Shown here: positions 48,033 to 64,000 of the stretch, in pieces
Layout of the letters: each line of letters starts with the position of its first letter
Position numbering within the stretch: the first letter of the stretch is position 1
Virus record (IMG/VR): IMGVR_UViG_3300031951_000001
Span: 258,373 to 322,372 of that record
Reading direction: 5' to 3' (one strand)
DNA length: 64,000 nt
Notes under the pieces: generated by a model
Database searches by the model: none
Seen by the model: only the letters and a program-made list of their open reading frames with translations
What the model was told of the DNA's origin: nothing
Position numbers and translations under genes: made by a program

Positions 48033-48040
48033 TATTTATA
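48033..48040 (+). promoter_or_regulatory. TATTTATA putative late-promoter motif
   Basis: Intergenic, 14 nt before ATG 48055. Confidence 0.55.
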
Positions 48041-48054
48041 TAAAAAAATTAAAG

Positions 48055-49467
48055 ATGAGACAAAAACTTAACGAAACCTATATTAATAGTTTGGTTGAAA
48101 AAATTATCAACGAAACTATCCATGAAAAGGCTGAACAAATCGAAAATATGTTGATGGGTAAGGAGACTGAAGAAGGTAATGCCTTTACAGCAGCTCTCGC
48201 TAAAACTAAAAAAGGAGAAAAATTTAAGGTAGGTGATAATACATTTACCGATACTTCGGATTATAATGAAGGTGAATTGGGTGAGGGTGAAAGTGTTTGT
48301 GAACAATGTGGTGCTAAAGGTCCTATCATGGAAGGAAACATGTGTGAACAGTGTTCAATGAAAGAAGGTGTTTACGAGGAAGAAGATATGGATGTAATGG
48401 ATATGGAAGATGATGAGGATGAACAAAACAAAGAGTTTTGTCAATATCAAAAAAGTAAAATCGATAGTGAAGACGATGAAGATGTTAGAAATGATATGGT
48501 TCAGAGATATGAAGAAAAATGCTCTAGCATGGAAAAGAGCATGAAAGACTTAGCTCGCAGACCAATTAACATGAATGAAAAATTAGTAGGAGGACAAAAA
48601 AGGTTAGATAAAAACAATAATGGAAGACTTGACTCTGAAGATTTTAAAATGTTGAGAAAAAGTAAAAAAAGTGGTGGCGAAACTAAGGAAATTTGGGGAG
48701 CTTTGGCAGGTGCTGCTGAAGCGGCTTTACCTTATGTGGCTCCGGCGGCAACTGATTGGGCTTTAGACAAAATGTTTGGTGAAAATGTCGAGAAAAAAAA
48801 TACAATAACAATGACCGAAGGAGAACTAATTAACTTCATTGAAAAAATTATCAAAGAAGAAAAATTGAAAGCAACTACTAAACATAAAGGATTAGCGACT
48901 TATGAAAAAGCTCACAAAGGTTCAGGTAAAGAGAACGAAGATTATCTAAAGAGTGTCACTAAAAAAATGAAAGACTATTTAAAAGATGGTTCTAAAGGGG
49001 ATTATGAAACTGAACCTGACTTTTTCCCAAAAGGAAATGGTGAATTGGGTGATATGAAAAAGAAGGCTTATATACCTTCAGACGCGGTTCAAGACTATGT
49101 AGATAATCTTACTGCCGCTGGTCAAGAAAACCTTGATTATGATGAAATACATCCTAATGAAGATTGGGTAAGTGATAACATTGAGGGGTCATCAAGAACA
49201 GGTAATAATCCTGAATGGGCAAATACTGGTAAATCTGATGTTAATAAAAAGAGAAACGAGATACGTGAGAAGAATATGTTGGCAAAGATTAAGAGAAAGG
49301 CTTACAATAAAGCACCACAACCTGTTGTTACCGATGAGACTGGCGATACAGGTACTGGTAAGTTAATGATGAAGCTAGAATCTGAAAACGAGAAGACAAC
49401 TCAAAAATTGAATGAAGAATTTGATAGAATGAAACAACTTCTCGGTTACAGTCAAAAAACACAATAA
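48055..49467 (+). CDS. Acidic, probably head-internal protein with an EF-hand-like loop and CxxC pairs
   Basis: 470 aa; 'LDKNNNGRLDSEDF', CEQC x2; leader-like motifs at the N-terminus, internally and at the C-terminus. Confidence 0.55.
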   Translation: MRQKLNETYINSLVEKIINETIHEKAEQIENMLMGKETEEGNAFTAALAKTKKGEKFKVGDNTFTDTSDYNEGELGEGESVCEQCGAKGPIMEGNMCEQCSMKEGVYEEEDMDVMDMEDDEDEQNKEFCQYQKSKIDSEDDEDVRNDMVQRYEEKCSSMEKSMKDLARRPINMNEKLVGGQKRLDKNNNGRLDSEDFKMLRKSKKSGGETKEIWGALAGAAEAALPYVAPAATDWALDKMFGENVEKKNTITMTEGELINFIEKIIKEEKLKATTKHKGLATYEKAHKGSGKENEDYLKSVTKKMKDYLKDGSKGDYETEPDFFPKGNGELGDMKKKAYIPSDAVQDYVDNLTAAGQENLDYDEIHPNEDWVSDNIEGSSRTGNNPEWANTGKSDVNKKRNEIREKNMLAKIKRKAYNKAPQPVVTDETGDTGTGKLMMKLESENEKTTQKLNEEFDRMKQLLGYSQKTQ

Positions 49468-49513
49468 TATACAATTAAATATTATTTCTTATTATTTCTC
49501 CATAAGGTTTCTT

Positions 49514-49981
49514 ATGGAGAATTTTTTTAATTATGTGACCAAACCGATAAGTCCTGAGGATGTTGATGTATGGTTCAGAAGTAATAATATGATTGTAGAA
49601 AAAATTGAATTGTATCACGATTTTACTCGTTCTTTATATGATTTGATGATGGACACCTATTTTGGTCATGACAGTAAAAGTAATGAAACCAAAATAACCA
49701 TGTCAGATGAGGACAATGAGAAACATTTTAACTGGTGTTGGAGTAAAGTGATTAATAACTTCGAAAAAGAGAGTATTGTATTTGAAGAAACTGGAGAACA
49801 CTATGACTACTTCAAGTCATTTTTCGATGAGATATTTTATGAACAAAAAGAAAGTATAATTAGAGAGTCTGTTGGGGATTTTTTCACAGAATTATTTGAC
49901 ATCAACAAAGGGTTTACAAAGTCAGATTTAGACATGGTTACATCAATATATAGGGCGTTAGAAAAAAATATTAAAATATAA
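49514..49981 (+). CDS. Hypothetical protein
   Basis: 155 aa ORF. Confidence 0.65.
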   Translation: MENFFNYVTKPISPEDVDVWFRSNNMIVEKIELYHDFTRSLYDLMMDTYFGHDSKSNETKITMSDEDNEKHFNWCWSKVINNFEKESIVFEETGEHYDYFKSFFDEIFYEQKESIIRESVGDFFTELFDINKGFTKSDLDMVTSIYRALEKNIKI

Positions 49982-50056
49982 AAAATCCTTTTTTTATTTA
50001 CATCTAGCACAAAAAAATTAATTTTACTCTATAATAAATCATTAAAAATTGTAACG

Positions 50057-50239
50057 ATGGATACACTAGAACAAATCAAGTCCCTCACAGAAGAATTGTC
50101 TGTTGATGCGACTAAATTTTTCAAGGGTAATAAGAGTGCCGGTACTAGAGCTAGAAAGTCAGCTCAAGAATTGAAAGCTCTTTTACAAACTTTGAGAAAC
50201 GAAATTTTGGACGAAAGAAAAAAAACTGAGGATGCTTAA
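50057..50239 (+). CDS. Histone H1-like (Hc1 family) nucleoid protein
   Basis: 'DATKFFKGNKSAGTRARKSAQELK' matches the Hc1 family pattern GNKxAGTRxRK. Confidence 0.8.
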   Translation: MDTLEQIKSLTEELSVDATKFFKGNKSAGTRARKSAQELKALLQTLRNEILDERKKTEDA

Positions 50240-50420
50240 TTTTGAATCTTTATTTTTATTTTGTTTTATATTTTCAGTTTTAAATGTTCTACGAACATGT
50301 TTTAGGTTAATAAGTGCCCTGCTACAGGCAAACCCACAACAGTTTGTTCTCGGTAGTAGGGAGCTTATTATCCTCGGTATCAGTATTTCATATGCCTTAA
50401 CATACATAATAAAGGGTTAA
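50232..50420 (+). CDS. Small two-TM membrane protein
   Basis: 62 aa; two hydrophobic stretches. Confidence 0.55.
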   Translation: MLNFESLFLFCFIFSVLNVLRTCFRLISALLQANPQQFVLGSRELIILGISISYALTYIIKG

Positions 50421-50422
50421 TC

Positions 50423-50854
50423 ATGAGTTTATATAAAGAATTTTCAACATTATTTCCATATCTTCAGTCAGTTAGAAAACTACAAAACTTTTTAAGTTTT
50501 GATGTGATGTTTTCTACAACATGGAAATTACCAAAAAAATATGTGGACGAAGAAAAAGTCATGGAACAAGAGTCCAAGACTGCTAATATGAGATTGTTTT
50601 CTTTTGTTTCAGAAATTGACGAACAATCAATTGAAAAAGTATCAACAAACATTCAGAGTATAATAAATTATAATTTAGAGAGAGAAGAGAAAGACCAACT
50701 TTTTCAAGAAAAAGTAAATGAGCTTAAAACATTATTTGAAAAACAATCTCTAAAGAATTTAAAGCAACTCAAATTTGAGTTCAAACAAACTAAAATAGAA
50801 TTGGAGGATAATGTAGATGAAATCCGAGAAAGCGCTAAATTGGTTTCAGAGTGA
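50423..50854 (+). CDS. Hypothetical protein
   Basis: 143 aa ORF in the operon. Confidence 0.65.
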   Translation: MSLYKEFSTLFPYLQSVRKLQNFLSFDVMFSTTWKLPKKYVDEEKVMEQESKTANMRLFSFVSEIDEQSIEKVSTNIQSIINYNLEREEKDQLFQEKVNELKTLFEKQSLKNLKQLKFEFKQTKIELEDNVDEIRESAKLVSE

Positions 50855-50999
50855 AGTTGAAAAAGATAAAGTTGATTTAGAAAGAGAAAAATTAAACTTT
50901 ATCAATTCAATTAAAACAAAAAATAAAGAAGAAATTATACCACAACCACCCAAAAAACTTAATCTATGGCAGAGAATAATGAAGGTGTTAATAGGATGA
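50817..50999 (+). CDS. Hypothetical protein
   Basis: 60 aa; C-term 'LNLWQRIMKVLIG' amphipathic helix. Confidence 0.55.
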   Translation: MKSEKALNWFQSEVEKDKVDLEREKLNFINSIKTKNKEEIIPQPPKKLNLWQRIMKVLIG

Positions 51000-51217
51000 T
51001 GGAGAAGTTCGCTTTACTTGCGGACGCCATGGAAAATATATATCCCCAAGGTAGAGGAGTTGTGGTGTTTGAGTTGAATGAAGATGATTTCAATCTAACT
51101 CAAAAAGAAATGCTAATACCTACGAATGTAAGTTCCCAATTCAAAGTTGATATTTCAGGGACTGAATTCATTTTTTTGAAACGTGAGTTGTTGAATGACG
51201 AAACAGATACGATTTAG
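50966..51217 (+). CDS. Hypothetical protein
   Basis: 83 aa ORF. Confidence 0.55.
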   Translation: MAENNEGVNRMMEKFALLADAMENIYPQGRGVVVFELNEDDFNLTQKEMLIPTNVSSQFKVDISGTEFIFLKRELLNDETDTI

Positions 51218-51824
51218 GGAAACCTTTTTCTTCTAATATCTTATATAGATATTTTCTTTGTATAGTTGAATGGTCTTTGACAAAAATAGTATCGTTTCTT
51301 TTTTCTAATAGAAAGTGATTGTAAAGAGAGTCTATAAACCTAGATGAATCTTCAATAGTCTTTAGAGTAAATAACTTATAATCGTCATCATTTTGTATCA
51401 CAATTTTATTATTTATTGATGACACCATAGACATACGGTTCTTTGGTAAATAAGTTGAGATAAGTTGTTCTAACGATATCTTCTCACCTGTGGAGTAATC
51501 TAAAACTTTATCAGGTATTTTGTAGTTATCTATTTTGATAATCTCGTATTTGTCATCTTCAAGAGTGACTTTACTCTGTCTCCCAAATTCGTCTTTTGTG
51601 TATAATGGAATTTGTTTATTATCATTTAGTTTTATTATTGCCAGTTCGTAATTACATGGCGACCCATTCTCAAAAGATTTCTCAAAAATAACCTTATTAC
51701 TTTCTTTAATCATAGTTTCAAACACAGAAACAGTTTTTTTGTGGGTCTGAAACTTGTTGATTATTTTCTTTTTTACTTTATTTTTGAAAAGAACAATCTG
51801 ATAATTAAAATTGGTTTTTTCCAT
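51168..51824 (-). CDS. Hypothetical protein
   Basis: 218 aa ORF divergent from dnaJ. Confidence 0.65.
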   Translation of the reverse strand: MEKTNFNYQIVLFKNKVKKKIINKFQTHKKTVSVFETMIKESNKVIFEKSFENGSPCNYELAIIKLNDNKQIPLYTKDEFGRQSKVTLEDDKYEIIKIDNYKIPDKVLDYSTGEKISLEQLISTYLPKNRMSMVSSINNKIVIQNDDDYKLFTLKTIEDSSRFIDSLYNHFLLEKRNDTIFVKDHSTIQRKYLYKILEEKGFPKSYLFRHSTTHVSKK

Positions 51825-51849
51825 AACAAAAATATAATAGAATAAAAAA

Positions 51850-52773
51850 ATGAGTGTAGAAAGTTTTTACGATATTTTGGGTGTAACTGAAACCGCAACA
51901 CAAGATGAGATTAAAAAGGCTTATAAGAAGAAAGCAGTTGAGCATCATCCTGATAAAGGTGGGAATGAAGACGTGTTCAAAAAAGTTTCCGAGGCGTATG
52001 ATACATTAGGAGATGAAGGGAAACGTAGAAACTACGATAGTCAAAAGAATAATCCATTTGGTCAAACAGGATTTAATCCGTTTGATGACTTCTTTAATGG
52101 CGCTTTTGGACAACAGTTTAATCAAAGACGAGCTGTCCCCGATAAGATTATAGACGTTACAATCGGGGCAATAGAATCTTTTCTTTCAAGGGATAAGTCA
52201 ATTACATATTCTAGACGTACAGAATGTCCTACTTGTCATGGACAAGGTGGTGATAGAATTAACTGTAATCAATGTGCTGGACAAGGATTTACAACCACAA
52301 GGGTTGGTAATGGAATGTTTATTCAAATGGTTAGACAAACTTGTGGTAGTTGCCAAGGACAAGGATTCACATATAGGACCAGATGTGGAGGATGTAATGG
52401 TGAATGTACAATAGCTTCATTAGAAACAATCAATGTAAAACTACCTCACGGGGTCGATGACGGACAGTTCTTCAAATTACAAGGAAGTGGTGATTATATC
52501 AATGGTATGTATGGAAATCTTGTAATGAGAGTTAGAATTGTTGCTGAAAATAACTTTGAAAAGGCTGGTAATGATTTGGTGTATAATGCGTTTTTTAATT
52601 TAGAAGAATTACAAAAAGATTCATTCAACATACCTCACCCTGATGGTAATATAGAAATAAAGGTTCCTACAGAATTTGATACGTCAAAACCCCTTCGAGT
52701 TAAATCGAAAGGGTTTAATACTAACGGAGTTGGGGATTTGTTTATTAAACTTTTTGTTAAGTTTAAAAAATAG
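51850..52773 (+). CDS. dnaJ: DnaJ chaperone (J domain, zinc finger, C-terminal domain)
   Basis: 'FYDILGV', 'HHPDKGG', four CxxCxGxG-type repeats. Confidence 0.92.
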   Translation: MSVESFYDILGVTETATQDEIKKAYKKKAVEHHPDKGGNEDVFKKVSEAYDTLGDEGKRRNYDSQKNNPFGQTGFNPFDDFFNGAFGQQFNQRRAVPDKIIDVTIGAIESFLSRDKSITYSRRTECPTCHGQGGDRINCNQCAGQGFTTTRVGNGMFIQMVRQTCGSCQGQGFTYRTRCGGCNGECTIASLETINVKLPHGVDDGQFFKLQGSGDYINGMYGNLVMRVRIVAENNFEKAGNDLVYNAFFNLEELQKDSFNIPHPDGNIEIKVPTEFDTSKPLRVKSKGFNTNGVGDLFIKLFVKFKK

Positions 52774-52927
52774 AGATAATGTCCTTCACTAATGATACCA
52801 TTCCGTAGAATGCGAAGAATATTATTGACACGGCAATAATTGCCCCAACTTTTTCCTTTTTTGAAAACTCAAATTCTGGAAATTTTTTCTTACCACAACT
52901 TGAACAACCTTTTTTCTTTTCTTCCAT
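52763..52927 (-). CDS. Small CxxC + TM protein (not in the ORF track)
   Basis: 54 aa MEEKKKGCSSCGKKK...GAIIAVSIFFAFYGMVSLVKDIISIF*; TATTTAT upstream on the minus strand (52946-52952). Confidence 0.6.
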   Translation of the reverse strand: MEEKKKGCSSCGKKKFPEFEFSKKEKVGAIIAVSIIFFAFYGMVSLVKDIISIF

Positions 52928-52977
52928 ATTATTTTTTTAGTAATAATAAATAAAGGAATAAATTTTTCAATTCAAAA

Positions 52978-53009
52978 TTTGCTTTTTTAAGGTTTATTGA
53001 TTATGTTTG
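52978..53009 (+). promoter_or_regulatory. Bacteroidota-type promoter TTTG-N20-TATGTTTG
   Basis: TTTG 52978-52981 and TATGTTTG 53002-53009, directly upstream of the methylase. Confidence 0.65.
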
Positions 53010-53013
53010 TACC

Positions 53014-53853: not shown

Positions 53854-53855
53854 TA

Positions 53856-53863
53856 TATTTATA
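53856..53863 (+). promoter_or_regulatory. TATTTATA putative late-promoter motif
   Basis: Intergenic, 14 nt before ATG 53878. Confidence 0.55.
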
Positions 53864-53877
53864 ATAAAAAAATAGAC

Positions 53878-55242
53878 ATGAAGTTTACATCACTTTTAAC
53901 AAATTTGATTTTGGAAAATTCAAGATTCCAAGTTCTTTACGACAAGATGGTTAAACCTGCTAAGGGTCAAGAAGGAGACGCCAGAAAACCTAAAGGTTTG
54001 ATGGACTTTGAAACTTTGAAGCAAATAATTTTTGCTGACCCAACAACCAAAGCACCACAAGGTATGACACCTGAAACTGCAAGTGTTGAGGACATGGAAA
54101 AAGTTAAAGTTGGTAAGTATAGTCAATGGCTGTTGAAGAATTTTGTAATGCCAACTTTTAATGATGAAAGGACAAATATCGAAAAGGGTACTGCTGAATA
54201 CAAAAGAGCGATGGATGAGTATCAAAGATTGTTTATTGAGGACTTGTTTAAAGTTACGGAGGACCTTAAAAAATATGAAAGGTTTAAAAACCAATTCCCT
54301 CAAGACAAGAGAGATATCAACAAATTAACAGTTGATGATGTTTTTGAATTGACTAAAGATTTGAGTCTTGAGAAGACTAAAGCTACAAAATCTGAAAAAG
54401 AAAAGGCAAAAACAACCTATGAACACCCTGGCGCAGAAATCATGTTTAGAGGCCCAAATTGGACTTTAGTTAAAATTGAAGACCAAGGTACTCTCGGTTC
54501 AGACGCCGCTTCATTCTATGGTGGTTATTATCTTTATAATGAAGGAGAGTCAAGATGGTGTACGTCTCCACATAATTCAAATTATTTCAGAACATATATT
54601 AAGGATGGTCCTTTGTATGTTGTATTACCTAATGATGATGGAGGTAGTGTTGGGCAAAAGACAGGTCTTCCACAAGAAAGATATCAGTTCCACTTCCCTT
54701 CAGGACAGTTTATGGATAGAGAAGACCGCCAGATTAATTTGGTTGAATATCTCAACGGTAAAATGTCTGAACTCAAAGAATACTTCAAACCTGAATTTGC
54801 TAAAGGATTGGTAAGTAAAGGTGGTGATAAGGTTGAAATTAACTATCCTGATAGCTCTGCCGGTAAATTCATTGCGTTATATGGTTTTGAAGATTTGTTT
54901 GAGACATTACCTGAAACAATTGAGAAACTTCTTATTACTAATAAATCTAAAGAACAAATTGCTTTGGATGTACCGGAATCATTGGGTAGATTCACTAATC
55001 TTGATGGTTTGTTACTTAACAATATTATTAGGTCTTTACCGGAATCGATAAGTAATCTTCAAAAACTTAAATTCTTGTCTTTGAATAATAACAAAAATCT
55101 TGAGTCATTACCGGAAGGTATGGCGGATTTACCAAAATTGGCATTTGTTAATTTGGTTGGTTCTAATCCTAATGTTCAGATACCTGATAGATTGAAAGAA
55201 AAGATGAGTGAAGAAATGCCAGGTTTTTGGCATGTTGATTAA
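53878..55242 (+). CDS. Protein with a 'WCTS' domain and C-terminal leucine-rich repeats
   Basis: 'SRWCTS', 'RYQFHF'; LRR units 'LPESISNLQKLKFLSLNNN', 'LPEGMADLPKLAFVNL'. Confidence 0.7.
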   Translation: MKFTSLLTNLILENSRFQVLYDKMVKPAKGQEGDARKPKGLMDFETLKQIIFADPTTKAPQGMTPETASVEDMEKVKVGKYSQWLLKNFVMPTFNDERTNIEKGTAEYKRAMDEYQRLFIEDLFKVTEDLKKYERFKNQFPQDKRDINKLTVDDVFELTKDLSLEKTKATKSEKEKAKTTYEHPGAEIMFRGPNWTLVKIEDQGTLGSDAASFYGGYYLYNEGESRWCTSPHNSNYFRTYIKDGPLYVVLPNDDGGSVGQKTGLPQERYQFHFPSGQFMDREDRQINLVEYLNGKMSELKEYFKPEFAKGLVSKGGDKVEINYPDSSAGKFIALYGFEDLFETLPETIEKLLITNKSKEQIALDVPESLGRFTNLDGLLLNNIIRSLPESISNLQKLKFLSLNNNKNLESLPEGMADLPKLAFVNLVGSNPNVQIPDRLKEKMSEEMPGFWHVD

Positions 55243-55248
55243 AAATTT

Positions 55249-55279: not shown

Positions 55280-55291
55280 TAAAAAAAAATT

Positions 55292-56448: not shown

Positions 56449-57519
56449 TTATTTAGAAACTTCCCACCATTTAGGACCTTCGTTAGATAAAAAGTCTACC
56501 TTTTTTTCATTTTTACCACCCATTGATACAACCCAAGTAATCATAGCTTCTCCATCTTTACTCAGTAATTTAGTTCCTGGAGTTGCTAATCTTTCCCCAT
56601 GGACACTATGAAAAATAATCGGAATTCCGTTTTTAATTGCACCTACATAACCAACGTGTGTATTAAAAGTAAATGGTGTTTTGTCTTGATAAATACCGGT
56701 TTTGTCTAATTGTCTATTTTGGACAGCTCTTTCACAAAATGCTTTTCCTTTATTACCTGAGTTACCATAGTACATACCAACAATATCCCCAACCTTTAAA
56801 GATGAAAGATTTACGTTTGATTTGGATGGATAAAAACTAGAAATGGTTGATGAAATTTTACTACCATTTTTACAACTTTTATCTTTACCCTCACCTTCTA
56901 GCTCAAAACAAGAACAAGAGTCCGAGTTTACAAATTTTGAGTTTCTAATATTGTCCCAATTAATCGAACCGTCGGTGAACATATTATATAAAACTGACCC
57001 TTTAGTTTTTGCGTTAACAAAAGCTTGCCACGCATTTCCAAGATAGTTACCCGTCATTTTTCTAACATATTCAGAACATCCTTCACCACCGCCATTACCA
57101 ATTGTGGACTCATTTTTATCTGAAATTTTATTACAAAGTGTATTATCAACCGCAACACAACTCTCTGTTCCCGACACTTTATTTTTTTCCTCAGATTTTT
57201 TTTGTAAAGACTTAATACCCATACTCATTACAGTTTTTGTATCTATTTTACCTGTAATTGGTAAGTTATTATCTTTTTGATATTTTTTTAAAGCGGTTAT
57301 TGTTTTTCCCCCAAAAATCCCGTCAACTCCGTCTAAATTTTTTCCACTCCTACCCAATAAACTACCATATTTAGGTTTAAGTTTTTTTTGTACGTCATAC
57401 ACAGTTTGGGAAAAACCTTCATCTAATCTAATTTTATTTTTTGATTTTGAAATGGCTTCTTTGTGTAAATTCAAAATTCTACTTTGTTCTTCTTCGGATA
57501 TTAGTAATTTTTTTAACAT
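56449..57519 (-). CDS. Peptidoglycan-binding domain + CHAP/NlpC-like cysteine hydrolase
   Basis: 'DGIFGGKTITALKKYQKDNNLPITG' (PG_binding_1); 'GCSEYV...GNAW', 'VGDIV', 'THVGYV' Cys-His dyad. Confidence 0.75.
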   Translation of the reverse strand: MLKKLLISEEEQSRILNLHKEAISKSKNKIRLDEGFSQTVYDVQKKLKPKYGSLLGRSGKNLDGVDGIFGGKTITALKKYQKDNNLPITGKIDTKTVMSMGIKSLQKKSEEKNKVSGTESCVAVDNTLCNKISDKNESTIGNGGGEGCSEYVRKMTGNYLGNAWQAFVNAKTKGSVLYNMFTDGSINWDNIRNSKFVNSDSCSCFELEGEGKDKSCKNGSKISSTISSFYPSKSNVNLSSLKVGDIVGMYYGNSGNKGKAFCERAVQNRQLDKTGIYQDKTPFTFNTHVGYVGAIKNGIPIIFHSVHGERLATPGTKLLSKDGEAMITWVVSMGGKNEKKVDFLSNEGPKWWEVSK

Positions 57520-57532
57520 TTTGGGGTTTTTA

Positions 57533-57540: not shown

Positions 57541-57633
57541 TTTAACATACCTATAATTGTTAATAAGTTTATGTAAATTTATTTTTTTTTGGGATTGATT
57601 TTAACTTATCTTTGTTTTTTTAAAATAAATAAA

Positions 57634-57978: not shown

Positions 57979-57997
57979 CGTATTTTATTTTATTCTA

Positions 57998-59023
57998 TTA
58001 TTTTATACAGGATAAACTTTTAGCTGTATTAACGACCTCCTTCAAATATCCTAAACTGCTAATATATTGAATTGTTGGTTCATCTGAAACTAAATTAATT
58101 GCTTTTTGGGTTACTGTAGTTGTATCAGTTTTGATATTTGGAATATAGTTTTTTATAACTTGGTTTTTATCTACTTTTAGTACCAAATCAGGTTTATCTT
58201 TAGGAAATGGTTGATATACACCATTAATACTATCACACGGAGCCATAAATTCAGGATTGTTTGTTTTACAATATTTTTTCTTAAATCTAGATGAACCTAA
58301 ATTATATGACATAATTGCGGCATCCATAACACTATTATTTGATGAAGATGGATTATCTATGAGTTGACCTTGGTTTATTATTTTAGACGGACTTTTACTA
58401 TCATAATATGGGGTTAATTCTTCGTATAAATTTATAAGGTGTTTAGTAACTGCTAAAAGTGAACCTGATAATGACATCAATTCCTCCAAATCTACTCCAT
58501 ATTTTTTTGCGATATCTGGAGTCATTTGAGCAATTCCCATACTCGGAACCCAATTATCTTTATTAAAAACTTTTTTAGCCCCATATTTCAAAACCTCACT
58601 AAAACCCGGTATTGTATCACTAAGCTTATTCATCAAGTATTCTGGTGCTGCTTTAATACCGTACATACCCATAACCTTACCAAAATCAGATTCTCTACCA
58701 ATTATTCCTATTGCATATTTTACGTAAAGTGGGTCAAAACCTTCAGAAATTACAGATACCGCAGCTGTTGAAATTTCAGGTGTGGTACAAGTATATTTGT
58801 TGAGGTTCAAATCGTATGTTTTGACAACGCTTTGACTTTTAATTGGGGTATTTTGGGTGACTGGTTGTTGTTTGGATACTTGTTGCATTCGATTCATTCC
58901 TTGAGCATATTTTTTTTGTTCTTCAGGCTTCAATGTGTTAGTTTTAAATTTGGTTTGCTCTAAAATTATTTTTTTTACAATTTTAAACAAATCAGATTCA
59001 GTGAGTTTGATAACTTTTTTCAT
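57998..59023 (-). CDS. Lysozyme-fold / transglycosylase-like protein with an N-terminal leader motif
   Basis: 'IIGRESDFG', 'SMGIAQMTP', 'AIMSYNLG'; N-term MKKVIKLTESDLFKIVKKIILEQ. Confidence 0.7.
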   Translation of the reverse strand: MKKVIKLTESDLFKIVKKIILEQTKFKTNTLKPEEQKKYAQGMNRMQQVSKQQPVTQNTPIKSQSVVKTYDLNLNKYTCTTPEISTAAVSVISEGFDPLYVKYAIGIIGRESDFGKVMGMYGIKAAPEYLMNKLSDTIPGFSEVLKYGAKKVFNKDNWVPSMGIAQMTPDIAKKYGVDLEELMSLSGSLLAVTKHLINLYEELTPYYDSKSPSKIINQGQLIDNPSSSNNSVMDAAIMSYNLGSSRFKKKYCKTNNPEFMAPCDSINGVYQPFPKDKPDLVLKVDKNQVIKNYIPNIKTDTTTVTQKAINLVSDEPTIQYISSLGYLKEVVNTAKSLSCIK

Positions 59024-59172
59024 TTGACTATAAAAAAATAAATATGTATCTTATTTCTTAATAAATAGATTTGAAATCAAATTAATACAGTCAGATTAAC
59101 AAAATTACTTATATTTGAAAAAAATTTTTTAAGATATAAAAATCTATATTTAATACTACATAACTTTATTCT

Positions 59173-60879
59173 ATGACTGAACTTCTATCAAAAAGGTTTG
59201 AGACCTTCGTGTCGTTGGAGCATCACGACTTCAATGAGTTAACTTTTACCGAAGAACAAGACGACTTAAATATTTTTTCCCTTTCAAATGGGAGGTTTTG
59301 GGAGGGAAGATTATCGTTCTCACTAAAACAAAAACACACGAGCAAGGAGGTATTTGAGGAAAACTTCAAAAATCCTTTGTATAATCTATTTCATAGAAGG
59401 ATGACTGGTGTTGTTGCTGCGGATGATGAGAGGATAACATTAAAGTTTTTTTTGTATTCAAGAAACCGAAGACCTGATGAGAAGTTTGTAAGAATTACTA
59501 CAAATTGTGTTTACATGACCTATAACTTCAAAAAGAATTGTCTTTATACGGGAATTGTAAATGGATATCATAAAAAGAAAAAAGTTAATAAGTCAGTTAA
59601 GATTGTGTCATTTTCTAACGATACGGTAAATGATTTGTTGGGTAAATACATAACATGGTTTCATTTTGTTCATGAAAATTTACCTGAAAAGAAAACCACC
59701 AAAAATGGTTTTTATGATTTGTTAAGTACGTTTATAGATAACATACCTGGCGTAGTTTATGACAATGAAAAGTATGGTACTAAAACCATCCATAAGACTA
59801 TTTTAACCAAAAAGAATATTAAGTTATCCGACAATTGGTCTTCATTTTCTTGTCATTTTCCCCAACCAAAGGCGAAAGACTTCAAGAAGTATGGTGATAG
59901 ATATCTCAATGTGATAATGGAGATTAATGGTTTAAAGGGTGATAAGATACGTAGAGTATTACATAAGATTAAAAACTTTAACCCTTTGGTGTATCACAAG
60001 GCAGTCCGTTTCTTTGGTAAAGATTATCTTTTGGGAAAGTCTGATGACGAACTACAAAATATATTTGAGACAACTTGTATGGGGGATTTTCTTAATATGA
60101 ATTTTGCCTCAATACACTCAAAGAAAGAACGCAATTGTATTTTTGAAATATTCAAATTGGTTATTAACGATGAAATTAATCCCCAAACATTTGCGGACCA
60201 TTTCATTTTCTATACTAACTTGAAAAACTATGAAAACATCAAATGGACCTCGACAACGTATGATGAGTTTAGGGAAGAACATTTGAATTGGACGGAGTTA
60301 AATGACTTTTATACCAAAGGAACGTTCGATAGAATATATAACGATAAATTTGAGAGTGAGGTTACCAAACCAATATTTACAGATGGGAAAACTTTCTATC
60401 CTGTAATTCTGAAAAGTTCCTCAGAATATAATGACGAATCATTTATTCAATCTAACTGTGTTAAAGGTTATATCAAACGACCTGACGCTTTGATAGTATC
60501 ATTGAGAAAAGATAGTCCTGATTCTAAAGAAAGAGCGACTATTGAGTTTAGAATTAGTTTTGATACTGTTATAGAACTTAAGAGAGTACAAACCCTCGGA
60601 AGATTTAATAAATCACTAACTTTGGAATGGGATAACATTTTACCTATATTAGATAAAAGAATTAATGATTTGGTATATACATTTGATACACCAAAGATAA
60701 AGTGTAAAATTGGATATATTGAATTCACATCAGAGTCTAAATTTGTTGATTATAATAAGATAAGACTTAATAGACCATTAATGAGATTTTATGATTCTTC
60801 GGATAATTCATTGGAGTGGGAGGATAAAAGAGTTAATAACATAAATGATATCGCAATACCTTTGCTAGAAGAATTTTAA
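59173..60879 (+). CDS. PcfJ-like domain protein
   Basis: C-term 'ESFIQSNCVKGY', 'RATIE', 'VQTLGRFN'. Confidence 0.65.
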   Translation: MTELLSKRFETFVSLEHHDFNELTFTEEQDDLNIFSLSNGRFWEGRLSFSLKQKHTSKEVFEENFKNPLYNLFHRRMTGVVAADDERITLKFFLYSRNRRPDEKFVRITTNCVYMTYNFKKNCLYTGIVNGYHKKKKVNKSVKIVSFSNDTVNDLLGKYITWFHFVHENLPEKKTTKNGFYDLLSTFIDNIPGVVYDNEKYGTKTIHKTILTKKNIKLSDNWSSFSCHFPQPKAKDFKKYGDRYLNVIMEINGLKGDKIRRVLHKIKNFNPLVYHKAVRFFGKDYLLGKSDDELQNIFETTCMGDFLNMNFASIHSKKERNCIFEIFKLVINDEINPQTFADHFIFYTNLKNYENIKWTSTTYDEFREEHLNWTELNDFYTKGTFDRIYNDKFESEVTKPIFTDGKTFYPVILKSSSEYNDESFIQSNCVKGYIKRPDALIVSLRKDSPDSKERATIEFRISFDTVIELKRVQTLGRFNKSLTLEWDNILPILDKRINDLVYTFDTPKIKCKIGYIEFTSESKFVDYNKIRLNRPLMRFYDSSDNSLEWEDKRVNNINDIAIPLLEEF

Positions 60880-60881
60880 TT

Positions 60882-61238
60882 ATGGAAAAAGTACCACAAC
60901 ATTGTATAGATAAGTTTAGACAGAAGTTTGGACAATATCCCTCAATTATTGAGTTTGATTATGATAGTGTAGATAACTTTGACAAATTGACGACAAGGTC
61001 ATATACTATTTGGTTTAAATCAATTTTCACTGACAAAGGTGTTAATTTTATAGAAAAATATATCGAGTATGACGCGTCAGGTATTCATTTCTATGTAGAA
61101 AAATTAGGAGAAAATAAAGTCAAAATATTTATAATGACAACACCTGATAGATACAGTGTTGCTGAATTTACAATAAATAATTTAATTAAAGCAAAAAATG
61201 GAAATTACAAGCAAAGAACTCCAAGAGAAAATGAATAA
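60882..61238 (+). CDS. Hypothetical protein
   Basis: 118 aa ORF. Confidence 0.6.
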   Translation: MEKVPQHCIDKFRQKFGQYPSIIEFDYDSVDNFDKLTTRSYTIWFKSIFTDKGVNFIEKYIEYDASGIHFYVEKLGENKVKIFIMTTPDRYSVAEFTINNLIKAKNGNYKQRTPRENE

Positions 61239-61521
61239 TGGTGAAAAATTTATAGTGGATTTTCACGCCGCGTGGTGTGGTCCCTGTAAAATGTTGAAAC
61301 CGATTTACGAAAAGGTTGCCCAAGATTTGGCATCAAAAAATTCAGATGTTAAACTTTATACAATGAACGTAGATAACAATCGTGATATGGTTGTATCGTT
61401 GGGTGTTCGTAGCGTACCAACAATTAAGAGTTTCGCTAACGGAAAAGAAATGAACACAAGAGTTGGTTTGTTACAAGAAAACGCACTTTTGGACCTAGCA
61501 AACAATTTGTTAAATGGATAA
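61198..61521 (+). CDS. trxA: Thioredoxin
   Basis: 'VDFHAAWCGPCK', 'VRSVPT'. Confidence 0.92.
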   Translation: MEITSKELQEKMNNGEKFIVDFHAAWCGPCKMLKPIYEKVAQDLASKNSDVKLYTMNVDNNRDMVVSLGVRSVPTIKSFANGKEMNTRVGLLQENALLDLANNLLNG

Positions 61522-61798
61522 GTTAGTTATAGTTTTCACAATGGACGGTTGTCCATTTTGTGAGATGATGAAAACCCAATTGGTTGAGAGTCAGATTGAG
61601 TTTGTTGAGAGAAATATCAATACTCATGCCGACGAATATCAATTGTTTGTTGAAGCAACTGGTAGTGAGTTTGTTCCGGCATTCATGATTATTGATGACC
61701 CATATGGGGAACCAAAGTCAGAAGGTTTTGTTCCTGACAAACACTACAATACAATAGAAGAAGGTATTCAAATTATTAAAAATAAATTAAACGGATGA
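61514..61798 (+). CDS. Glutaredoxin/NrdH-like protein
   Basis: 'FTMDGCPFC', 'FVP'. Confidence 0.8.
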   Translation: MDKLVIVFTMDGCPFCEMMKTQLVESQIEFVERNINTHADEYQLFVEATGSEFVPAFMIIDDPYGEPKSEGFVPDKHYNTIEEGIQIIKNKLNG

Positions 61799-62319
61799 AT
61801 CTATCATTTAACAAACACGGACAACTACACATACCAATAAAGAAATGGGATTTAGATGACGGAAATATTTTAGTGATATATCAAGGGTCTCGAGGAGCGA
61901 ACCCCGATTTGGACTTTATTGTCAAATATAAAGCACCAAACAAAAGATTGAGAGCTCCATCTCACACACATTGGATTGTTGATTTGATTGTTAAATCTAG
62001 TCATTCATCATCCGATGTGTGTGACTTTGTTTCTGATTGGATTGAATTATATGATAAGATAGAACCATTCAATTCAACCGAGGAGAGAGACAACTACGAA
62101 TTAATCTACAATGAGTATTTCTGTGATACTTATACAACCATAGATAACTTGGGTCATTTATCTGTGGAATTTTTGTCAGCACTTATTGAGTTATTCATTA
62201 AGTGTGAAAAACAAACTCCTGGTGCTTTCATGTTTAAAAATCTTTTACAGTTAGTTAGGGACTTCTGTAATGGCAAGAAAGATTTTTATCAGGTGGTTTC
62301 TTATTCTAAACGAGTTTAG
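61795..62319 (+). CDS. Hypothetical protein
   Basis: 174 aa ORF; 'RAPSHTHWIVDL'. Confidence 0.65.
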   Translation: MNLSFNKHGQLHIPIKKWDLDDGNILVIYQGSRGANPDLDFIVKYKAPNKRLRAPSHTHWIVDLIVKSSHSSSDVCDFVSDWIELYDKIEPFNSTEERDNYELIYNEYFCDTYTTIDNLGHLSVEFLSALIELFIKCEKQTPGAFMFKNLLQLVRDFCNGKKDFYQVVSYSKRV

Positions 62320-63143
62320 ATAATATATAATTCAGATATCTTGTCACCAACTAACCAAGGTTTGGTTTCTAGTTGTGTGTCTAAATCATTACTTATATCG
62401 TAACCCTTGAGATATTTTTTCTCAAATCTTTGAATATTAAAATCGAACACGTCCAATACCATCGATTTAATTTTCTCATTCATATATGGGGAGTTACTTA
62501 ATATATCGATAATAGGGTCGTTTGTTTCCTCATCAATAACGTCGGTATATTTTATTGACATGTTTGTTGCTTTAATTGCTTTGAATAGCTGATACGCGAT
62601 GTATTCACAGTAATAAAATGCAGACCTACCGTTGTTTAGACTATACCCATATGGGAACTCAGACTGTCTTGAACCTCTAATGTCTTTAAATGAATAATCT
62701 ATTGGTTTTTCAATGTATTCATTGGTGTATATCAAAAGCTTATCCGTGTAATCTACCGCTTCCCAAATGTCAGAATGATTATATACATAATTTAAAACTC
62801 TCTCATGGAATATAGGTCTTACACTATTGAAAAATTCAAAACAAAATTCTTTCTTTTCTCGATGTAAGTATTCACAGTCATATTTGATTAAATCAATCGT
62901 ATTAATGTTTTTGATACCTAATGTAGATAATTGAGATTTCATCTTTTCAAAAAATGATTCTTTGATTGAATCTAAATCAATTATTTTCTTTGATGATGTT
63001 TTGCCCTCAACAACAAAGAATGGCTCAAATTGTGTTACTCTAATTTCAGTGTATGGATTACCATCTTTAGATATTTCCGACATGATATAATCAGCGAATT
63101 TATTAACGATACCGATTCTGTAATTAGGATAAATATACTTCAT
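62316..63143 (-). CDS. Degenerate S-adenosylmethionine synthetase (MetK)-like protein
   Basis: 'NKFADYI', 'VVEGKTSS', 'GRSAFYYCEYIA', 'VFDF' occur in MetK-like order, but the catalytic motifs are missing; ATG 63143 preferred. Confidence 0.5.
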   Translation of the reverse strand: MKYIYPNYRIGIVNKFADYIMSEISKDGNPYTEIRVTQFEPFFVVEGKTSSKKIIDLDSIKESFFEKMKSQLSTLGIKNINTIDLIKYDCEYLHREKKEFCFEFFNSVRPIFHERVLNYVYNHSDIWEAVDYTDKLLIYTNEYIEKPIDYSFKDIRGSRQSEFPYGYSLNNGRSAFYYCEYIAYQLFKAIKATNMSIKYTDVIDEETNDPIIDILSNSPYMNEKIKSMVLDVFDFNIQRFEKKYLKGYDISNDLDTQLETKPWLVGDKISELYII

Positions 63144-63190
63144 AAAACTGTTTTGAAATTGATAGTGAAAAAAATCCACATATTAAATAG

Positions 63191-63225
63191 AAAAAGGGGA
63201 ATAAATTCCCCCTTTAATTTTTTTT
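63191..63225. terminator. Probable terminator hairpin
   Basis: aaaaaggggaat-aa-attccccctttaa followed by a T run; imperfect inverted repeat downstream of the minus-strand 47 aa gene. Confidence 0.55.
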
Positions 63226-63246
63226 ACACCCAACATCCCATTCATA

Positions 63247-63390
63247 TTATTTCTTATAATACTTCTCAACAACCTTATTTACCTGTTCTTGAACAGTTTG
63301 GTTATTTTGAGGCGTTTGAATTTGACCAGGTGCTGGTTGAGCAGGTGCCGCTTGAGCTTCTGCCTGTTTGTTTTTACATCCACATCCCAT
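63247..63390 (-). CDS. Small MGCGC-start peptide
   Basis: 47 aa MGCGCKNKQAEAQAAP...VVEKYYKK; TATTTAT upstream on the minus strand (63434-63440). Confidence 0.65.
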   Translation of the reverse strand: MGCGCKNKQAEAQAAPAQPAPGQIQTPQNNQTVQEQVNKVVEKYYKK

Positions 63391-63492
63391 GTGATTAGTT
63401 TTTTTAGGTAGTTTATTTCTTATCGTTATAAACATAAATATCTTTATTTGAGACAATTTGTAAAGAATATTGCTTTATTTACGAAATAAAAA

Positions 63493-63499
63493 TATTTAT
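63493..63499 (+). promoter_or_regulatory. TATTTAT putative late-promoter motif
   Basis: 7 nt upstream of ATG 63507. Confidence 0.5.
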
Positions 63500-63506
63500 C
63501 AGTACT

Positions 63507-64000
63507 ATGGGTAAAATAAAACTCACGGAAAGTGAATTTAAGAAGTTTTTGAGGATTACGCTTGTCGAGCAAAGTGAGGAAGAATACTACAAAATTTCAC
63601 CAGAAGAATTTTCAGAGTTGATGAAGTTCGGTGGATATCACGGAAAAAGTGTAACAAAATTAAAAATGTTTGGAGGTAAACCAATTTGGATTACTGGTGA
63701 TTTGATTTTAAATGATACACCTACCGATTCATTAGGTAATGTTAAATATATTGAGGGTAGATTAGATATTAGACATACAAACATAAGTGATTTGTCAGGT
63801 GTTGAAGTTAAAAATTATACTTGGGACTCTGGAACACCGAGGGAGGCAAGACGTAAAGCTGAAGAAAGAAGAAAAAAATTACAAAGCGCCGAGGAGAGAA
63901 GATTCAATAAGGAGTGGGATATCGATAATCCTGATATTACTGAACTAGGTGAAAAGGCAAATGCTCTATATGATATGTTGGTTAAAGATAGAGAAATCGA
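63507..64000 (+). CDS. Partial CDS with the leader motif and LRR-like units (runs off the window)
   Basis: MGKIKLTESEFKKFLRITLVEQ...GDLILNDTPTDSLGNVKYIEGRLDIRHTNISDL; no stop before 64000. Confidence 0.75.
   Translation, partial: MGKIKLTESEFKKFLRITLVEQSEEEYYKISPEEFSELMKFGGYHGKSVTKLKMFGGKPIWITGDLILNDTPTDSLGNVKYIEGRLDIRHTNISDLSGVEVKNYTWDSGTPREARRKAEERRKKLQSAEERRFNKEWDIDNPDITELGEKANALYDMLVKDREI

What the first reader, a model, noticed from the sequence alone, without database searches (positions are those of the whole stretch)
48033..64000. Candidate cargo-addressing system: unrelated genes share both an upstream TATTTAT(A) motif and an N-terminal KLTE-type leader
Seen: five unrelated proteins begin with a similar ~13-23 aa amphipathic leader ending in Glu. 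They are 59023(-) MKKVIKLTESDLFKIVKKIILEQ, 63507 MGKIKLTESEFKKFLRITLVEQ, 48055 MRQKLNETYINSLVEKIINE, 57519(-) MLKKLLISEEEQSRILNLHKE and 53878 MKFTSLLTNLILE (the last two are looser matches). The 48055 protein repeats the motif internally (TITMTEGELINFIEKIIKEE, ~48802) and at its C-terminus (KLNEEFDRMKQLLGY). All five genes have TATTTAT(A) within about 7-40 nt upstream, while neighbouring genes use Bacteroidota host-type promoters. Established: T4 internal proteins carry an N-terminal capsid-targeting sequence that the prohead protease removes after Glu. Inference: this is a portable promoter-plus-leader cassette that sends diverse cargo (CHAP-like hydrolase, transglycosylase-like enzyme, two LRR-like proteins, an acidic scaffold-like protein) into the head for delivery at infection.
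Basis: partly seen in the sequence, partly recalled or inferred. Interest (0 to 1): 0.85.

Follow-up and report, generated by a model that had tools for sequence, protein, structure and literature searches.

The report
Phage late promoter plus protein address tag
An uncultured giant phage of Bacteroidota puts a short, highly stereotyped helix on the front of unrelated late proteins; the same undescribed tag sits on thousands of metagenomic phage proteins and most likely addresses them to the T4-type head for delivery at infection.

Summary
Two genes (59023-, 63507+) carry a stereotyped tag of about 23 residues, MKK-VI-KLTESDL-x-RIVKRVI-x-EQ ("type A"). A profile of it finds 4,946 cluster representatives (E<=1e-3) among 1.84 billion proteins, almost always at residue 1, on very diverse cargo. 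57519(-) carries a second portable tag ("type B", ..EEEKxRILNLHE..). 48055 holds an internal type-A-like copy and a weaker N-terminal one. The 53878 N-terminus is specific to its own family. ATATTTAT is a conserved, orientation-specific promoter-like element without a -35 box. It precedes all five genes, but also structural, head and other genes, so it is a phage, probably late, promoter rather than part of a leader cassette. Relatives encode a T4-type head module (Gp20 portal, S77/gp21 protease, acidic scaffold, Gp23 capsid protein), and tag genes sit directly after the capsid gene. All portable tags end in a hydrophobic-x-Glu motif that fits gp21 specificity. The best reading is a prohead-core targeting and propeptide tag that works like the T4 capsid targeting sequence. 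Packaging and cleavage are inferred, not shown. I found no entry for the tag in Pfam, PHROGs, the PDB, cultured phages or the searched literature.

The parts
48033..48039 (+). TATTTAT promoter-like element (ATATTTAT from 48032), first T 22 nt before the ATG of the 470-aa gene
   Evidence: conserved at -21/-22 or -11/-12 in 40 of 43 distinct orthologous loci
48055..49467 (+). 470-aa acidic, largely helical/disordered core protein of the clade; Zn-ribbon-like CxxC..CxxC, EF-hand-like loop, highly conserved C-terminal half
   Evidence: 151 relatives in IMG/VR; conservation profile; AF2 mean pLDDT 55.8, helices plus disorder
48055..48114 (+). N-terminal helix of the 470-aa protein, a weak relative of the tag, ending I-N-E
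   Evidence: 23.5 bits against a profile of the family's internal copies; absent from the top window hits of the general leader profile
48808..48867 (+). internal type-A-like tag copy (residues 252-271), ending I-K-E
   Evidence: conserved in the whole family; 10.5 bits against the leader profile in the window
49408..49449 (+). C-terminal motif F-x-R-M-K-x-L-L-G-Y, shared only with the C-terminus of the head scaffold protein of relatives; not a leader copy
   Evidence: 82 occurrences in 5,635 ORFs: 54 scaffold C-termini, 28 C-termini of this family, none elsewhere
53856..53862 (+). TATTTAT promoter-like element, 22 nt before the ATG
   Evidence: conserved before orthologues
53878..55242 (+). 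454-aa protein: detached N-terminal helix, linker, unknown middle domain, C-terminal leucine-rich repeats; its N-terminus is family-specific
   Evidence: LRR; AF2 pLDDT 82.5 with residues 1-14 below 50; no match to the N-terminus outside the family; weak fold match to a 'structural protein' of jumbo phage PA5oct
57534..57540 (-). TATTTAT promoter-like element, 21 nt before the ATG
56449..57519 (-). 356-aa protein: type-B tag (57457-57519), PG_binding_1 domain, C-terminal Cys/His domain (hydrolase type not confirmed)
   Evidence: Pfam PG_binding_1 8.8e-10; type-B profile 38.3 bits; type-B family
59038..59044 (-). TATTTAT promoter-like element, 21 nt before the ATG (a second copy at 59061-59067)
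57998..59023 (-). 341-aa protein: type-A tag (58955-59023), low-complexity linker, SLT-like transglycosylase body
   Evidence: leader profile 51.6 bits; orthologue in L005 keeps the tag and gives a weak SLT hit
63493..63499 (+). TATTTAT promoter-like element, 14 nt before the ATG
63507..64000 (+). 5' part of a 471-aa acidic coiled-coil-rich protein with a type-A tag (63507-63572); it runs off the window and contig end
   Evidence: full length read in L001; leader profile 46.4 bits
42926..43726 (+). phage sigma-70-family factor (regions 1.2, 2, 4) in an operon with a host-type promoter; candidate reader of TATTTAT (inferred)
   Evidence: Pfam; host-type promoter before 42432; a sigma factor is a core gene of moraphages (PMC12619734)
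1308..1314 (+). example of the same promoter element before a non-leader, structural-module gene (others at 11262, 17030, 19579, 35431 on +; 14873-14879 and 52946-52952 on -)

Best explanation
The window is the last 64 kb of a 322-kb uncultured aquatic phage, a distant member of the T4 superfamily that probably infects Bacteroidota.

Its genes fall into two promoter classes. Host-type TTTG..TAnnTTTG precedes non-structural genes. The phage-specific single element (G/T)A-TATTTAT-(A/T) precedes structural, lysis and tag-bearing genes, and in relatives the head genes too. It starts either 11-12 or 21-22 nt before the ATG.

A subset of these late proteins begins with a short module: a strand-like K-V-I-K-L, a T-E-S-D helix cap, and three turns of amphipathic helix (hydrophobic L12, I15, V16, V19, I20 against basic R14, K17, R18, K21). 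The module ends in an invariant Glu and is followed by a low-complexity linker and unrelated cargo.

Most likely this module is a prohead-core address. It docks the protein into the gp22-like scaffolding core while the Gp23-type shell assembles. The gp21-type protease then cuts after the hydrophobic-x-Glu at its end. The cargo stays in the head and enters the cell with the DNA. The cargo here is two cell-wall-binding or cell-wall-cutting enzymes and an acidic coiled-coil-rich protein; elsewhere it is thousands of small orphan proteins.

The 470-aa core protein carries tag-like helices and, in addition, the scaffold's C-terminal tail motif, so it is probably itself a core component.

Shown: the tag, its spread, its position in proteins, the promoter, the T4-type head module in relatives, and the synteny. 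Inferred: docking, cleavage, packaging, injection, and which sigma factor reads the promoter.
For: - Tag reality and spread.
- Cargo is diverse and mostly orphan: at least 60 unrelated groups among 104 proteins. Pfam hits are limited to a few families (PG_binding_1 in 3 members, lysozyme and GNAT in one each).
- The tag is virtually confined to phages: 2 hits in 596 Gb of cellular genomes, both on MAG contigs.
- Selection is on the protein, and Glu22 is kept in 94 of 95.
- Promoter statistics and logo.
- The promoter precedes portal, protease and scaffold genes and the window's large structural-module ORFs beside the gp25 baseplate module found upstream.
- T4-type head module in relatives, including a 308-kb contig that also holds a 470-family gene: Portal_T4 8.7e-77, Peptidase_S77 6.5e-24, Gp23 1.6e-74. 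The protease is 30-45% identical to gp21 of T4-like phages.
- The capsid propeptide aligns with T4 gp23, with S-F-L-I-N-E/A opposite T4's S-F-L-T-E/A.
- In 80 loci chosen only for the protease there are 48 tag genes (5.2 per 100 kb, against 0.95 in loci centred on the 470 family). All 38 that could be placed lie 3-9 kb downstream of the protease, that is just after the capsid gene.
- The pair type-B protein plus type-A transglycosylase that follows the capsid gene in L005 is the same pair as 57519(-)/59023(-) here.
- The scaffold-like C-terminal motif of the 470 family.
- T4 precedent: IPII and IPIII share MKTYQEFIAE, which is sufficient for packaging and is removed by gp21 (PMC9958956, PMC10229621).
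- The phage has other lysis-type enzymes without the tag: a transglycosylase with an N-terminal membrane anchor at 14283-14849(-) and an amidase at 44938-45540.
Against: - There is no virion or processing data; the clade is uncultured.
- The window's own head module was not reached. The protease is inferred from relatives and from the moraphage core gene set.
- The tag has no sequence similarity to the T4 capsid targeting sequence.
- Hydrophobic-x-Glu is common in this AT-rich proteome, so the cleavage motif alone is weak evidence.
- A quarter of the representatives carry extra copies that are internal (33) or C-terminal (6). That fits a docking peptide better than a simple N-terminal propeptide.
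- Gln follows the Glu in most tags, whereas the T4 sites read here have Ala.
- The promoter also drives genes with no obvious virion role, such as GIY-YIG endonucleases and small DNA-binding proteins.
- A scaffold C-terminus profile does not itself reach the 470 family.
Confidence: 0.58

Rival explanations
1. The tag is a docking peptide for a virion site other than the head core (neck, tail, baseplate or capsid exterior). The cell-wall enzymes would then ride on the particle but would not be packed with the DNA or processed.
For: Late co-expression with structural genes. Cargo enriched in peptidoglycan-binding and -cutting enzymes, which in many phages sit on tails. Copies at C-termini and inside proteins. 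The 454-aa protein weakly resembles a PA5oct 'structural protein' of unspecified location.
Against: Tag genes sit immediately after the capsid gene, not in the baseplate or tail modules. The invariant terminal Glu in a gp21-like motif is left unexplained. Thousands of tiny orphan cargos are hard to place on a tail.
Confidence: 0.15
2. The tag recruits a chaperone or unfoldase (the phage DnaJ with host DnaK, or a phage ClpA-like ATPase) to late proteins for folding, stabilisation or timed degradation, without addressing them to the particle.
For: A DnaJ homologue lies among the tag genes (51850-52773). Moraphages encode DnaJ/DnaK, and a ClpA-like ATPase is among their shared genes. A hydrophobic core flanked by basic residues resembles DnaK-binding segments (established knowledge). 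The T4 gp23 N-terminus directs proteins to GroEL (cited in PMC10052503).
Against: Conservation is far tighter than a degenerate chaperone motif needs: M1, K2, K3, T8, E9, L12 and E22 are kept in 90% or more and L7 is invariant. Only some moraphages have DnaK, while the tag occurs on contigs of all sizes. This reading does not explain the synteny with the capsid gene.
Confidence: 0.1
3. The tag is a membrane-active or lysis-related amphipathic helix that brings cell-wall enzymes and other proteins to the inner membrane.
For: Amphipathic, net positive helix (sequence). Several cargos are peptidoglycan hydrolases lacking signal peptides.
Against: Most cargos are not wall enzymes. The tag also sits inside a very acidic core protein. 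The phage already has a membrane-anchored transglycosylase and an amidase. The strict sequence conservation argues for a protein partner.
Confidence: 0.07
4. The resemblance is compositional chance in an AT-rich genome (Lys/Ile/Glu-rich N-termini), and TATTTAT is just AT-rich intergenic DNA.
For: This holds for the weakest case only: the 53878 N-terminus has no significant match outside its family. [LIV]-x-E is frequent by chance.
Against: 4,946 profile hits at E<=1e-3, 21 at E<=1e-10. Shuffled proteins give no hit at 10 bits or more. Strict orientation and spacing of the motif, 9 against 0.
Confidence: 0.01

Closest known systems
T4 capsid targeting sequence of internal proteins IPII/IPIII (Mullaney and Black 1996; PMC9958956, PMC10229621)
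   Same: A short N-terminal peptide shared by otherwise unrelated late proteins of a phage with a gp20/gp21/gp22/gp23-type head. It ends in hydrophobic-x-Glu, the gp21 site. In T4 it is sufficient to load foreign proteins into the scaffolding core, and it is then cut off.
   Different: No sequence similarity. It is about 23 residues instead of 10. It has at least two portable sequence types. It is found on thousands of clusters across an environmental clade rather than a handful of proteins. Extra internal, tandem and C-terminal copies exist. Gln rather than Ala usually follows the Glu. Function is untested.
N-terminal propeptides of head and ejection proteins of giant phages phiKZ, 201phi2-1 and SPN3US (PMC10052503, PMC5694885)
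   Same: Many head proteins in large phages carry propeptides of 20-250 residues removed after Glu by the prohead protease. Long acidic propeptides are cut several times, which resembles the layout of the 470-aa protein.
   Different: Those propeptides are not a shared stereotyped sequence. The SPN3US paper describes its own three-position gp245 cleavage motif; that it reads small-residue-x-Glu and that the protease is only distantly related are from my general knowledge, not checked here.
Encapsulation peptides of bacterial microcompartments and cargo-loading peptides of encapsulins (general knowledge, not tested here)
   Same: A portable amphipathic helix of about 18 residues plus a flexible linker, at either end of diverse cargo, that docks to the inside of a protein shell. 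This is the best analogy for the C-terminal and internal copies.
   Different: Cellular organelles, unrelated sequences, no proteolytic removal. This is an analogy of design only.
T4 late promoter TATAAATA (gp55-dependent; established knowledge)
   Same: A single AT-rich -10-like element without a -35 box, placed close to the start of late and structural genes of a T4-superfamily phage.
   Different: The sequence is TATTTAT(A), the reverse complement of the T4 box in the sense orientation. The reading factor is unknown; the window encodes a sigma-70-family protein with regions 2 and 4. The two spacing classes suggest very short or absent 5' leaders.
Moraphages, aquatic jumbo phages of Bacteroidota (PMC12619734)
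   Same: Size, habitat and gene content match: sigma factor, DnaJ, glutaredoxin, primase, gp25/gp6 baseplate, prohead core protease.
   Different: That paper does not mention the tag, and mentions a promoter only in another context. Membership of this contig in the lineage was not tested by phylogeny.

Membership tests
T4-type capsid targeting sequence / prohead-core propeptide | Short N-terminal peptide shared by otherwise unrelated proteins of one phage | tested here: met
   Types A and B. Not met for the 53878 N-terminus.
T4-type capsid targeting sequence / prohead-core propeptide | Ends in the gp21 cleavage motif (Leu/Ile-x-Glu) | tested here: met
   [VIL]-x-Glu at tag positions 20-22, with Glu22 in 94 of 95. 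Type B ends L-H-E. Only the presence of the motif was tested, not cleavage.
T4-type capsid targeting sequence / prohead-core propeptide | The phage has a gp21 (S77) protease, a gp22-like scaffold and a Gp23 capsid protein | tested here: inconclusive
   Met in relatives L005, L264 and L273. The window's own contig beyond 64 kb was not reached; moraphage core genes include the protease.
T4-type capsid targeting sequence / prohead-core propeptide | Sequence homology to MKTYQEFIAE of T4 IPII/IPIII | tested here: not met
   T4 sequences read from AF158101 show no resemblance by eye to the tag consensus; no formal alignment was run. So it is not a member by descent; the claim is 'works like'.
T4-type capsid targeting sequence / prohead-core propeptide | The protein is found in proheads or virions, its tag is removed, and the tag is sufficient to load a reporter | not testable with these tools
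   Uncultured clade: no tblastn match of two tag-bearing proteins or of the tag itself in 50,697 phage records.
T4-type late promoter | Single -10-like element, no -35, before late and structural genes | tested here: met
   Logo of 682 unique sites; precedes head genes and the window's large structural-module genes.
T4-type late promoter | Consensus TATAAATA read by gp55 with gp33 and gp45 | tested here: not met
   The consensus is (G/T)ATATTTAT(A/T). TATAAATA in sense orientation precedes 1 of 56 genes. gp55 homologues were not searched.
Bacteroidota housekeeping promoter (-33 TTTG / -7 TAnnTTTG) | Both elements at the right spacing before neighbouring genes | tested here: met
   42432, 53014, 55292 and 55644 have both elements; seven more have the -7 element only. 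None of the five tag genes has one within 50 nt (59023- has one at -84).
Known protein domain families (Pfam, PHROGs, PDB chains) | The tag matches a described family | tested here: not met
   No family covers the tag in Pfam or PHROGs scans of 97 tagged proteins. PDB best E-value is 0.66. No paper contains LTESDL.

The most novel reading that the evidence does not exclude
The tag is a general, position-independent encapsulation peptide of an abundant environmental clade of T4-superfamily phages. Its presence would then mark, from sequence alone, a 'cargo-ome' of thousands of mostly orphan proteins that are packed into heads and injected with the DNA (candidate anti-defence and takeover effectors). 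Multi-copy proteins would be polyproteins cut into units by the prohead protease.
Probability: 0.3. Interest if true: 0.85.

Novelty: new variant of a known kind. Interest (0 to 1): 0.7.

Why it matters
If the tag addresses proteins to the head, injected proteins of uncultured phages could be listed directly from metagenomes. That gives a ready catalogue of candidate anti-defence and host-takeover effectors, which otherwise can only be found by virion proteomics of cultured phages. It would also show that the T4 capsid-targeting principle is an ecosystem-wide system with its own sequence code, and it would supply a second, longer tag for loading foreign proteins into T4-type capsids. How proteins are localised to the scaffolding core is still called mysterious for T4 itself (PMC9958956), and a very conserved tag with an expected conserved partner makes that question testable. 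The conserved TATTTAT element also gives a sequence-only marker of the phage-specific (probably late) gene class in these phages.

Tried and rejected
- Megablast and tblastn of the region, the 341-aa and 470-aa proteins and the tag against 50,697 phage records found nothing. Only the protease finds cultured T4-like relatives.
- Word-indexed searches restricted to the first 40 residues returned only 17 and 13 candidates and gave no census. They did yield P0011 (tag + PG_binding_1 + lysozyme) and P0004/P0007 (a tag at both ends).
- AF2 of the 470-aa family gave pLDDT 55.8 with no confident packing of the three helices, so no fold search was made and the idea that the copies form an intramolecular bundle is unsupported.
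- A profile of the scaffold C-terminus does not reach the 470 family or the protease. Only the short pattern is shared. The apparent likeness of the protease C-terminus was dropped.
- A profile of the 53878 N-terminus finds no other family, including the 239-aa protein in the gp67 position that looked similar by eye.
- Fold search of the 454-aa model gave only LRR hits in the PDB.
- Walking upstream from the window reached the gp25 baseplate module and replication genes, not the head genes.
- The 'DNA cassette' idea was rejected on codon variation and variable spacing.
- The catalytic type of the 356-aa protein (CHAP-like) could not be confirmed.

Full report
WHAT THE WINDOW IS. The window is identical to the last 64 kb of IMG/VR contig 3300031951_000001 (322,372 bp). 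It has no close relative among 50,697 deposited phage genomes. Upstream of the window lie a gp25 baseplate gene, large structural-looking ORFs, ribonucleotide reductase and a DnaB-type helicase. Inside the window are very large ORFs, some with SprB repeats, plus a primase, a RuvC-like resolvase, an SbcC-like ATPase, a sigma-70-family factor, an amidase, a DnaJ homologue, a methyltransferase-like ORF, thioredoxin and glutaredoxin. Size, habitat and gene content fit the recently named moraphages, aquatic jumbo phages predicted to infect Bacteroidota (PMC12619734). Lineage membership was not tested by a tree.

THE LEADERS. Outside the first ~30 residues the five proteins are mutually unrelated. 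They are not one kind of leader.

Type A. 59023(-) and 63507(+) share a module with the consensus M-K-K-[VI]-[IV]-[KR]-L-T-E-S-D-L-x-[RK]-I-V-K-[RK]-V-I-x-E-Q. A 12-sequence alignment of this module was built from six gene families in the window, related loci and database hits. It was searched with HMMER against 1.84 billion cluster representatives. It found 4,946 proteins at E<=1e-3 and 21 at E<=1e-10. Among the best 150, the match starts at or near residue 1 in nearly all.

These proteins are short (median 120 aa) and very diverse. After removing the first 32 residues, 104 proteins of 90 aa or more fall into 62 groups, and the largest group is held together mainly by second tag copies. Of 97 scanned, only three have PG_binding_1, one a phage lysozyme domain and one a GNAT domain. 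PHROGs adds only endolysin families and a few unannotated ones. No Pfam, PHROGs or PDB entry covers the tag, and no paper in the library contains LTESDL.

It hit only two stretches in 596 Gb of bacterial and archaeal genomes. Both are MAG contigs, and one is a 164-kb contig of a Bacteroidota MAG with the same promoter. So the tag is virtually confined to phage sequence.

Synonymous codons vary freely at Leu7, Thr8, Ser10, Arg14 and Arg18. Residues 13-24 were not fixed by the search pattern, yet they are conserved, with Glu22 kept in 94 of 95. Selection therefore acts on the peptide.

Reading the sequence directly: K-V-I-K-L looks strand-like, T-E-S-D is a helix N-cap, and L12, I15, V16, V19 and I20 form one face of a three-turn helix opposite R14, K17, R18 and K21. 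The 25 residues after the tag are rich in Ser, Thr, Pro, Gly, Asp and Glu, which is linker-like.

Of the 150 representatives, 37 carry two or more copies. By position the copies are 148 N-terminal, 33 internal and 6 C-terminal.

Type B. 57519(-) does not match type A. It belongs to a second N-terminal module, M-K-x-L-x-F-I-x-E-E-E-K-x-R-I-L-x-L-H-E-x-A-T-K-x-Q-Y-L. This module is present at the start of at least 17 different proteins of 112-401 aa in the fetched loci (38.3 bits in the window). Its first half (hydrophobic-T/N-E-x-D/E-x-x-R-I-L) resembles type A.

48055. The internal copy (residues 252-271) is among the best conserved short blocks of a family with 151 relatives. The N-terminus is a weaker version of the same pattern. 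The C-terminal 'repeat' is something else. The pattern F-x-R-[MI]-K-x-[LI]-[LMI] occurs 82 times in 5,635 unique ORF products: 54 at the C-terminus of the head scaffold protein, 28 at the C-terminus of this family, and nowhere else. The pattern was derived after seeing both families, and a scaffold C-terminus profile does not reach the 470 family. It is therefore a lead rather than proof. AF2 gives helices and disorder for this protein (pLDDT 55.8).

53878. The N-terminus is conserved within its family, including residues beyond the Glu. A profile of it finds no other family. AF2 (pLDDT 82.5) shows a low-confidence detached helix 3-24, a linker, a middle domain with no PDB counterpart, and C-terminal leucine-rich repeats. 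In BFVD the third hit is a 'structural protein' of jumbo phage PA5oct (E 1.8e-9, TM 0.31). Portability of this N-terminus is not shown.

THE PROMOTER. In the window, ATATTTAT occurs 17 times on both strands. Nine occurrences lie within 50 nt upstream of a start in sense orientation and none in antisense. The motif is kept at -21/-22 or -11/-12 before the 470-family gene in 40 of 43 distinct relatives that share only 35-60% protein identity.

Across all loci there are 682 unique sites that are followed by an ORF. They give the logo (G/T)-A-TATTTAT-(A/T) with a T-rich tract 13-17 nt upstream and no -35 element. The ATG lies 11-12 or 21-22 nt from the first T.

Leader genes carry the motif in 18 of 23 cases, against 220 of 1,412 other genes (Fisher 8e-11, with homologues not fully independent). 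Of 95 unique leader genes selected by coding sequence only, 61 have the motif, at -11/-12 (22 genes) or -18 to -23 (26 genes).

The motif is not specific to leader genes, however. In the window it precedes the large structural-module ORFs at 1341, 11274, 17055, 19609 and 35455 and a membrane-anchored transglycosylase at 14849(-). In relatives it precedes portal, protease and scaffold genes, and also GIY-YIG endonucleases, small DNA-binding proteins and membrane proteins.

Host-type TTTG..TAnnTTTG precedes 42432 (the operon with the sigma factor), 53014, 55292 and 55644. The simplest reading is a phage-specific late promoter, with the phage sigma factor as a candidate reader.

THE HEAD CONNECTION. 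The 54%-identical orthologue of the 59023(-) protein lies in L005, from a 113-kb contig. It sits directly after a type-B protein, and both follow this gene order: portal (Portal_T4, 8.7e-77), 249-aa, 156-aa, protease (Peptidase_S77, 6.5e-24), a very acidic 489-aa scaffold-like protein, capsid protein (Gp23, 1.6e-74), an endonuclease VII-like gene. This order mirrors T4 genes 20-67-68-21-22-23.

The same module occurs in jumbo relatives L264 and L273 (308 and 318 kb), with type-B and type-A genes beside it. L264's contig also holds a 470-family gene. The protease is 83-100% identical among the 80 best of at least 598 confirmed IMG/VR matches, and 30-45% identical to gp21 of T4-like phages and cyanophages.

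The capsid protein's N-terminal region aligns with the T4 gp23 propeptide. It places S-F-L-I-N-E/A opposite T4's S-F-L-T-E/A. That gp23 is cut after Glu65 is established knowledge.

In 80 loci chosen only for the protease (919 kb) there are 48 tag genes: 38 type B and 10 type A. That is 5.2 per 100 kb, against 0.95 per 100 kb in the 1,582 kb centred on the 470 family. All 38 that could be positioned lie 3-9 kb downstream of the protease, with a peak at 4-5 kb just after the capsid gene, and none lie upstream.

MECHANISM. In T4, IPII and IPIII share M-K-T-Y-Q-E-F-I-A-E. This peptide loads foreign proteins into the scaffolding core and is removed by gp21 (PMC9958956, PMC10229621). How it is recognised is still unknown.

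The present tags have the same logic: they sit on late proteins, they are N-terminal and portable, they end in hydrophobic-x-Glu, and they occur in phages with the same head machinery. I therefore favour a prohead-core address that is then cut off (confidence 0.58).

The internal and C-terminal copies, and the linker design, suggest that docking does not depend on position. This is like the encapsulation peptides of bacterial microcompartments or encapsulins. Multi-copy proteins may be cut into units.

The rivals are: docking elsewhere on the particle; recruitment of DnaJ/DnaK or a ClpA-like ATPase, which these phages encode; and membrane targeting of wall enzymes. Chance is excluded for types A and B and for the promoter.

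VERDICT. The promoter and the tag are two separate features that coincide because tagged proteins are late proteins. The tag is not a homologue of the T4 sequence, but it plausibly works like it. It appears undescribed in the libraries and literature searched.

Noticed in passing
window 42432-43726: A sigma-70-family factor (regions 1.2, 2 and 4) lies in an operon behind a host-type TTTG..TAnnTTTG promoter. This suggests an early-to-late switch, with the phage sigma reading TATTTAT.
   Followed up: partly
all loci; window 11262 and 63493: TATTTAT starts either 11-12 or 21-22 nt before the ATG, two classes one helical turn apart. The short class would give leaderless or nearly leaderless mRNAs.
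   Followed up: partly
L003 666-1751 (-), about 4-5 kb beyond the window end: A further 361-aa gene begins M-S-K-T-L-N-E-S-E-L-Q-E-K-M-V.. (tag-like) and has ATATTTAT 21 nt upstream, so the cluster of tagged genes continues past the contig end.
   Followed up: no
window 47298-48023; L005 11505-12500; L264 15592-16818: The DUF5661 protein just before the 470-aa gene carries two copies of a short G-[GA]-[FY]-x-[VA]-P motif. Proteins encoded beside the head module of relatives start with a similar G-S-Y-V-G-P-M stretch. This may be another short linear motif.
   Followed up: no
window 19609-35416: Two giant ORFs (1,481 and 3,782 aa) lie in a stretch with strongly negative GC skew (-0.2 to -0.35) and raised GC, with no family match for the one scanned. 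They are probably fibre- or adhesin-like virion proteins next to SprB-repeat proteins at 5254-11247.
   Followed up: no
window 51850-52773: A full-length DnaJ homologue (J domain, Cys-rich zinc centre, C-terminal domain) lies in the middle of the tagged-gene region, behind a host-type -7 element. This matches the chaperone genes reported for moraphages.
   Followed up: partly
window 14283-14849 (-) and 44938-45540 (+): A transglycosylase-like protein with a hydrophobic N-terminal anchor (behind TATTTAT) and an Amidase_2 protein, both without the tag. They are candidate true lysis enzymes, distinct from the tagged wall enzymes.
   Followed up: partly
L003 4064-5446 (-) versus L001: One copy of the 471-aa tagged protein carries a tandem duplication of about 26 residues in its acidic region relative to the other contig, so the cargo region varies in length within near-identical phages.
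   Followed up: no
P0012, P0015, P0032, P0039 and 33 others: Internal tag copies keep the K-K-[VI]-[IV]-[KR]-L-T-E start that follows Met in N-terminal copies, as if neighbouring tag-cargo genes had fused into one reading frame.
   Followed up: partly
window 61198-61798: Adjacent thioredoxin and glutaredoxin genes whose C-terminal helices (ending L-N-G) gave false regex hits for the tag. They are unrelated to it.
   Followed up: yes
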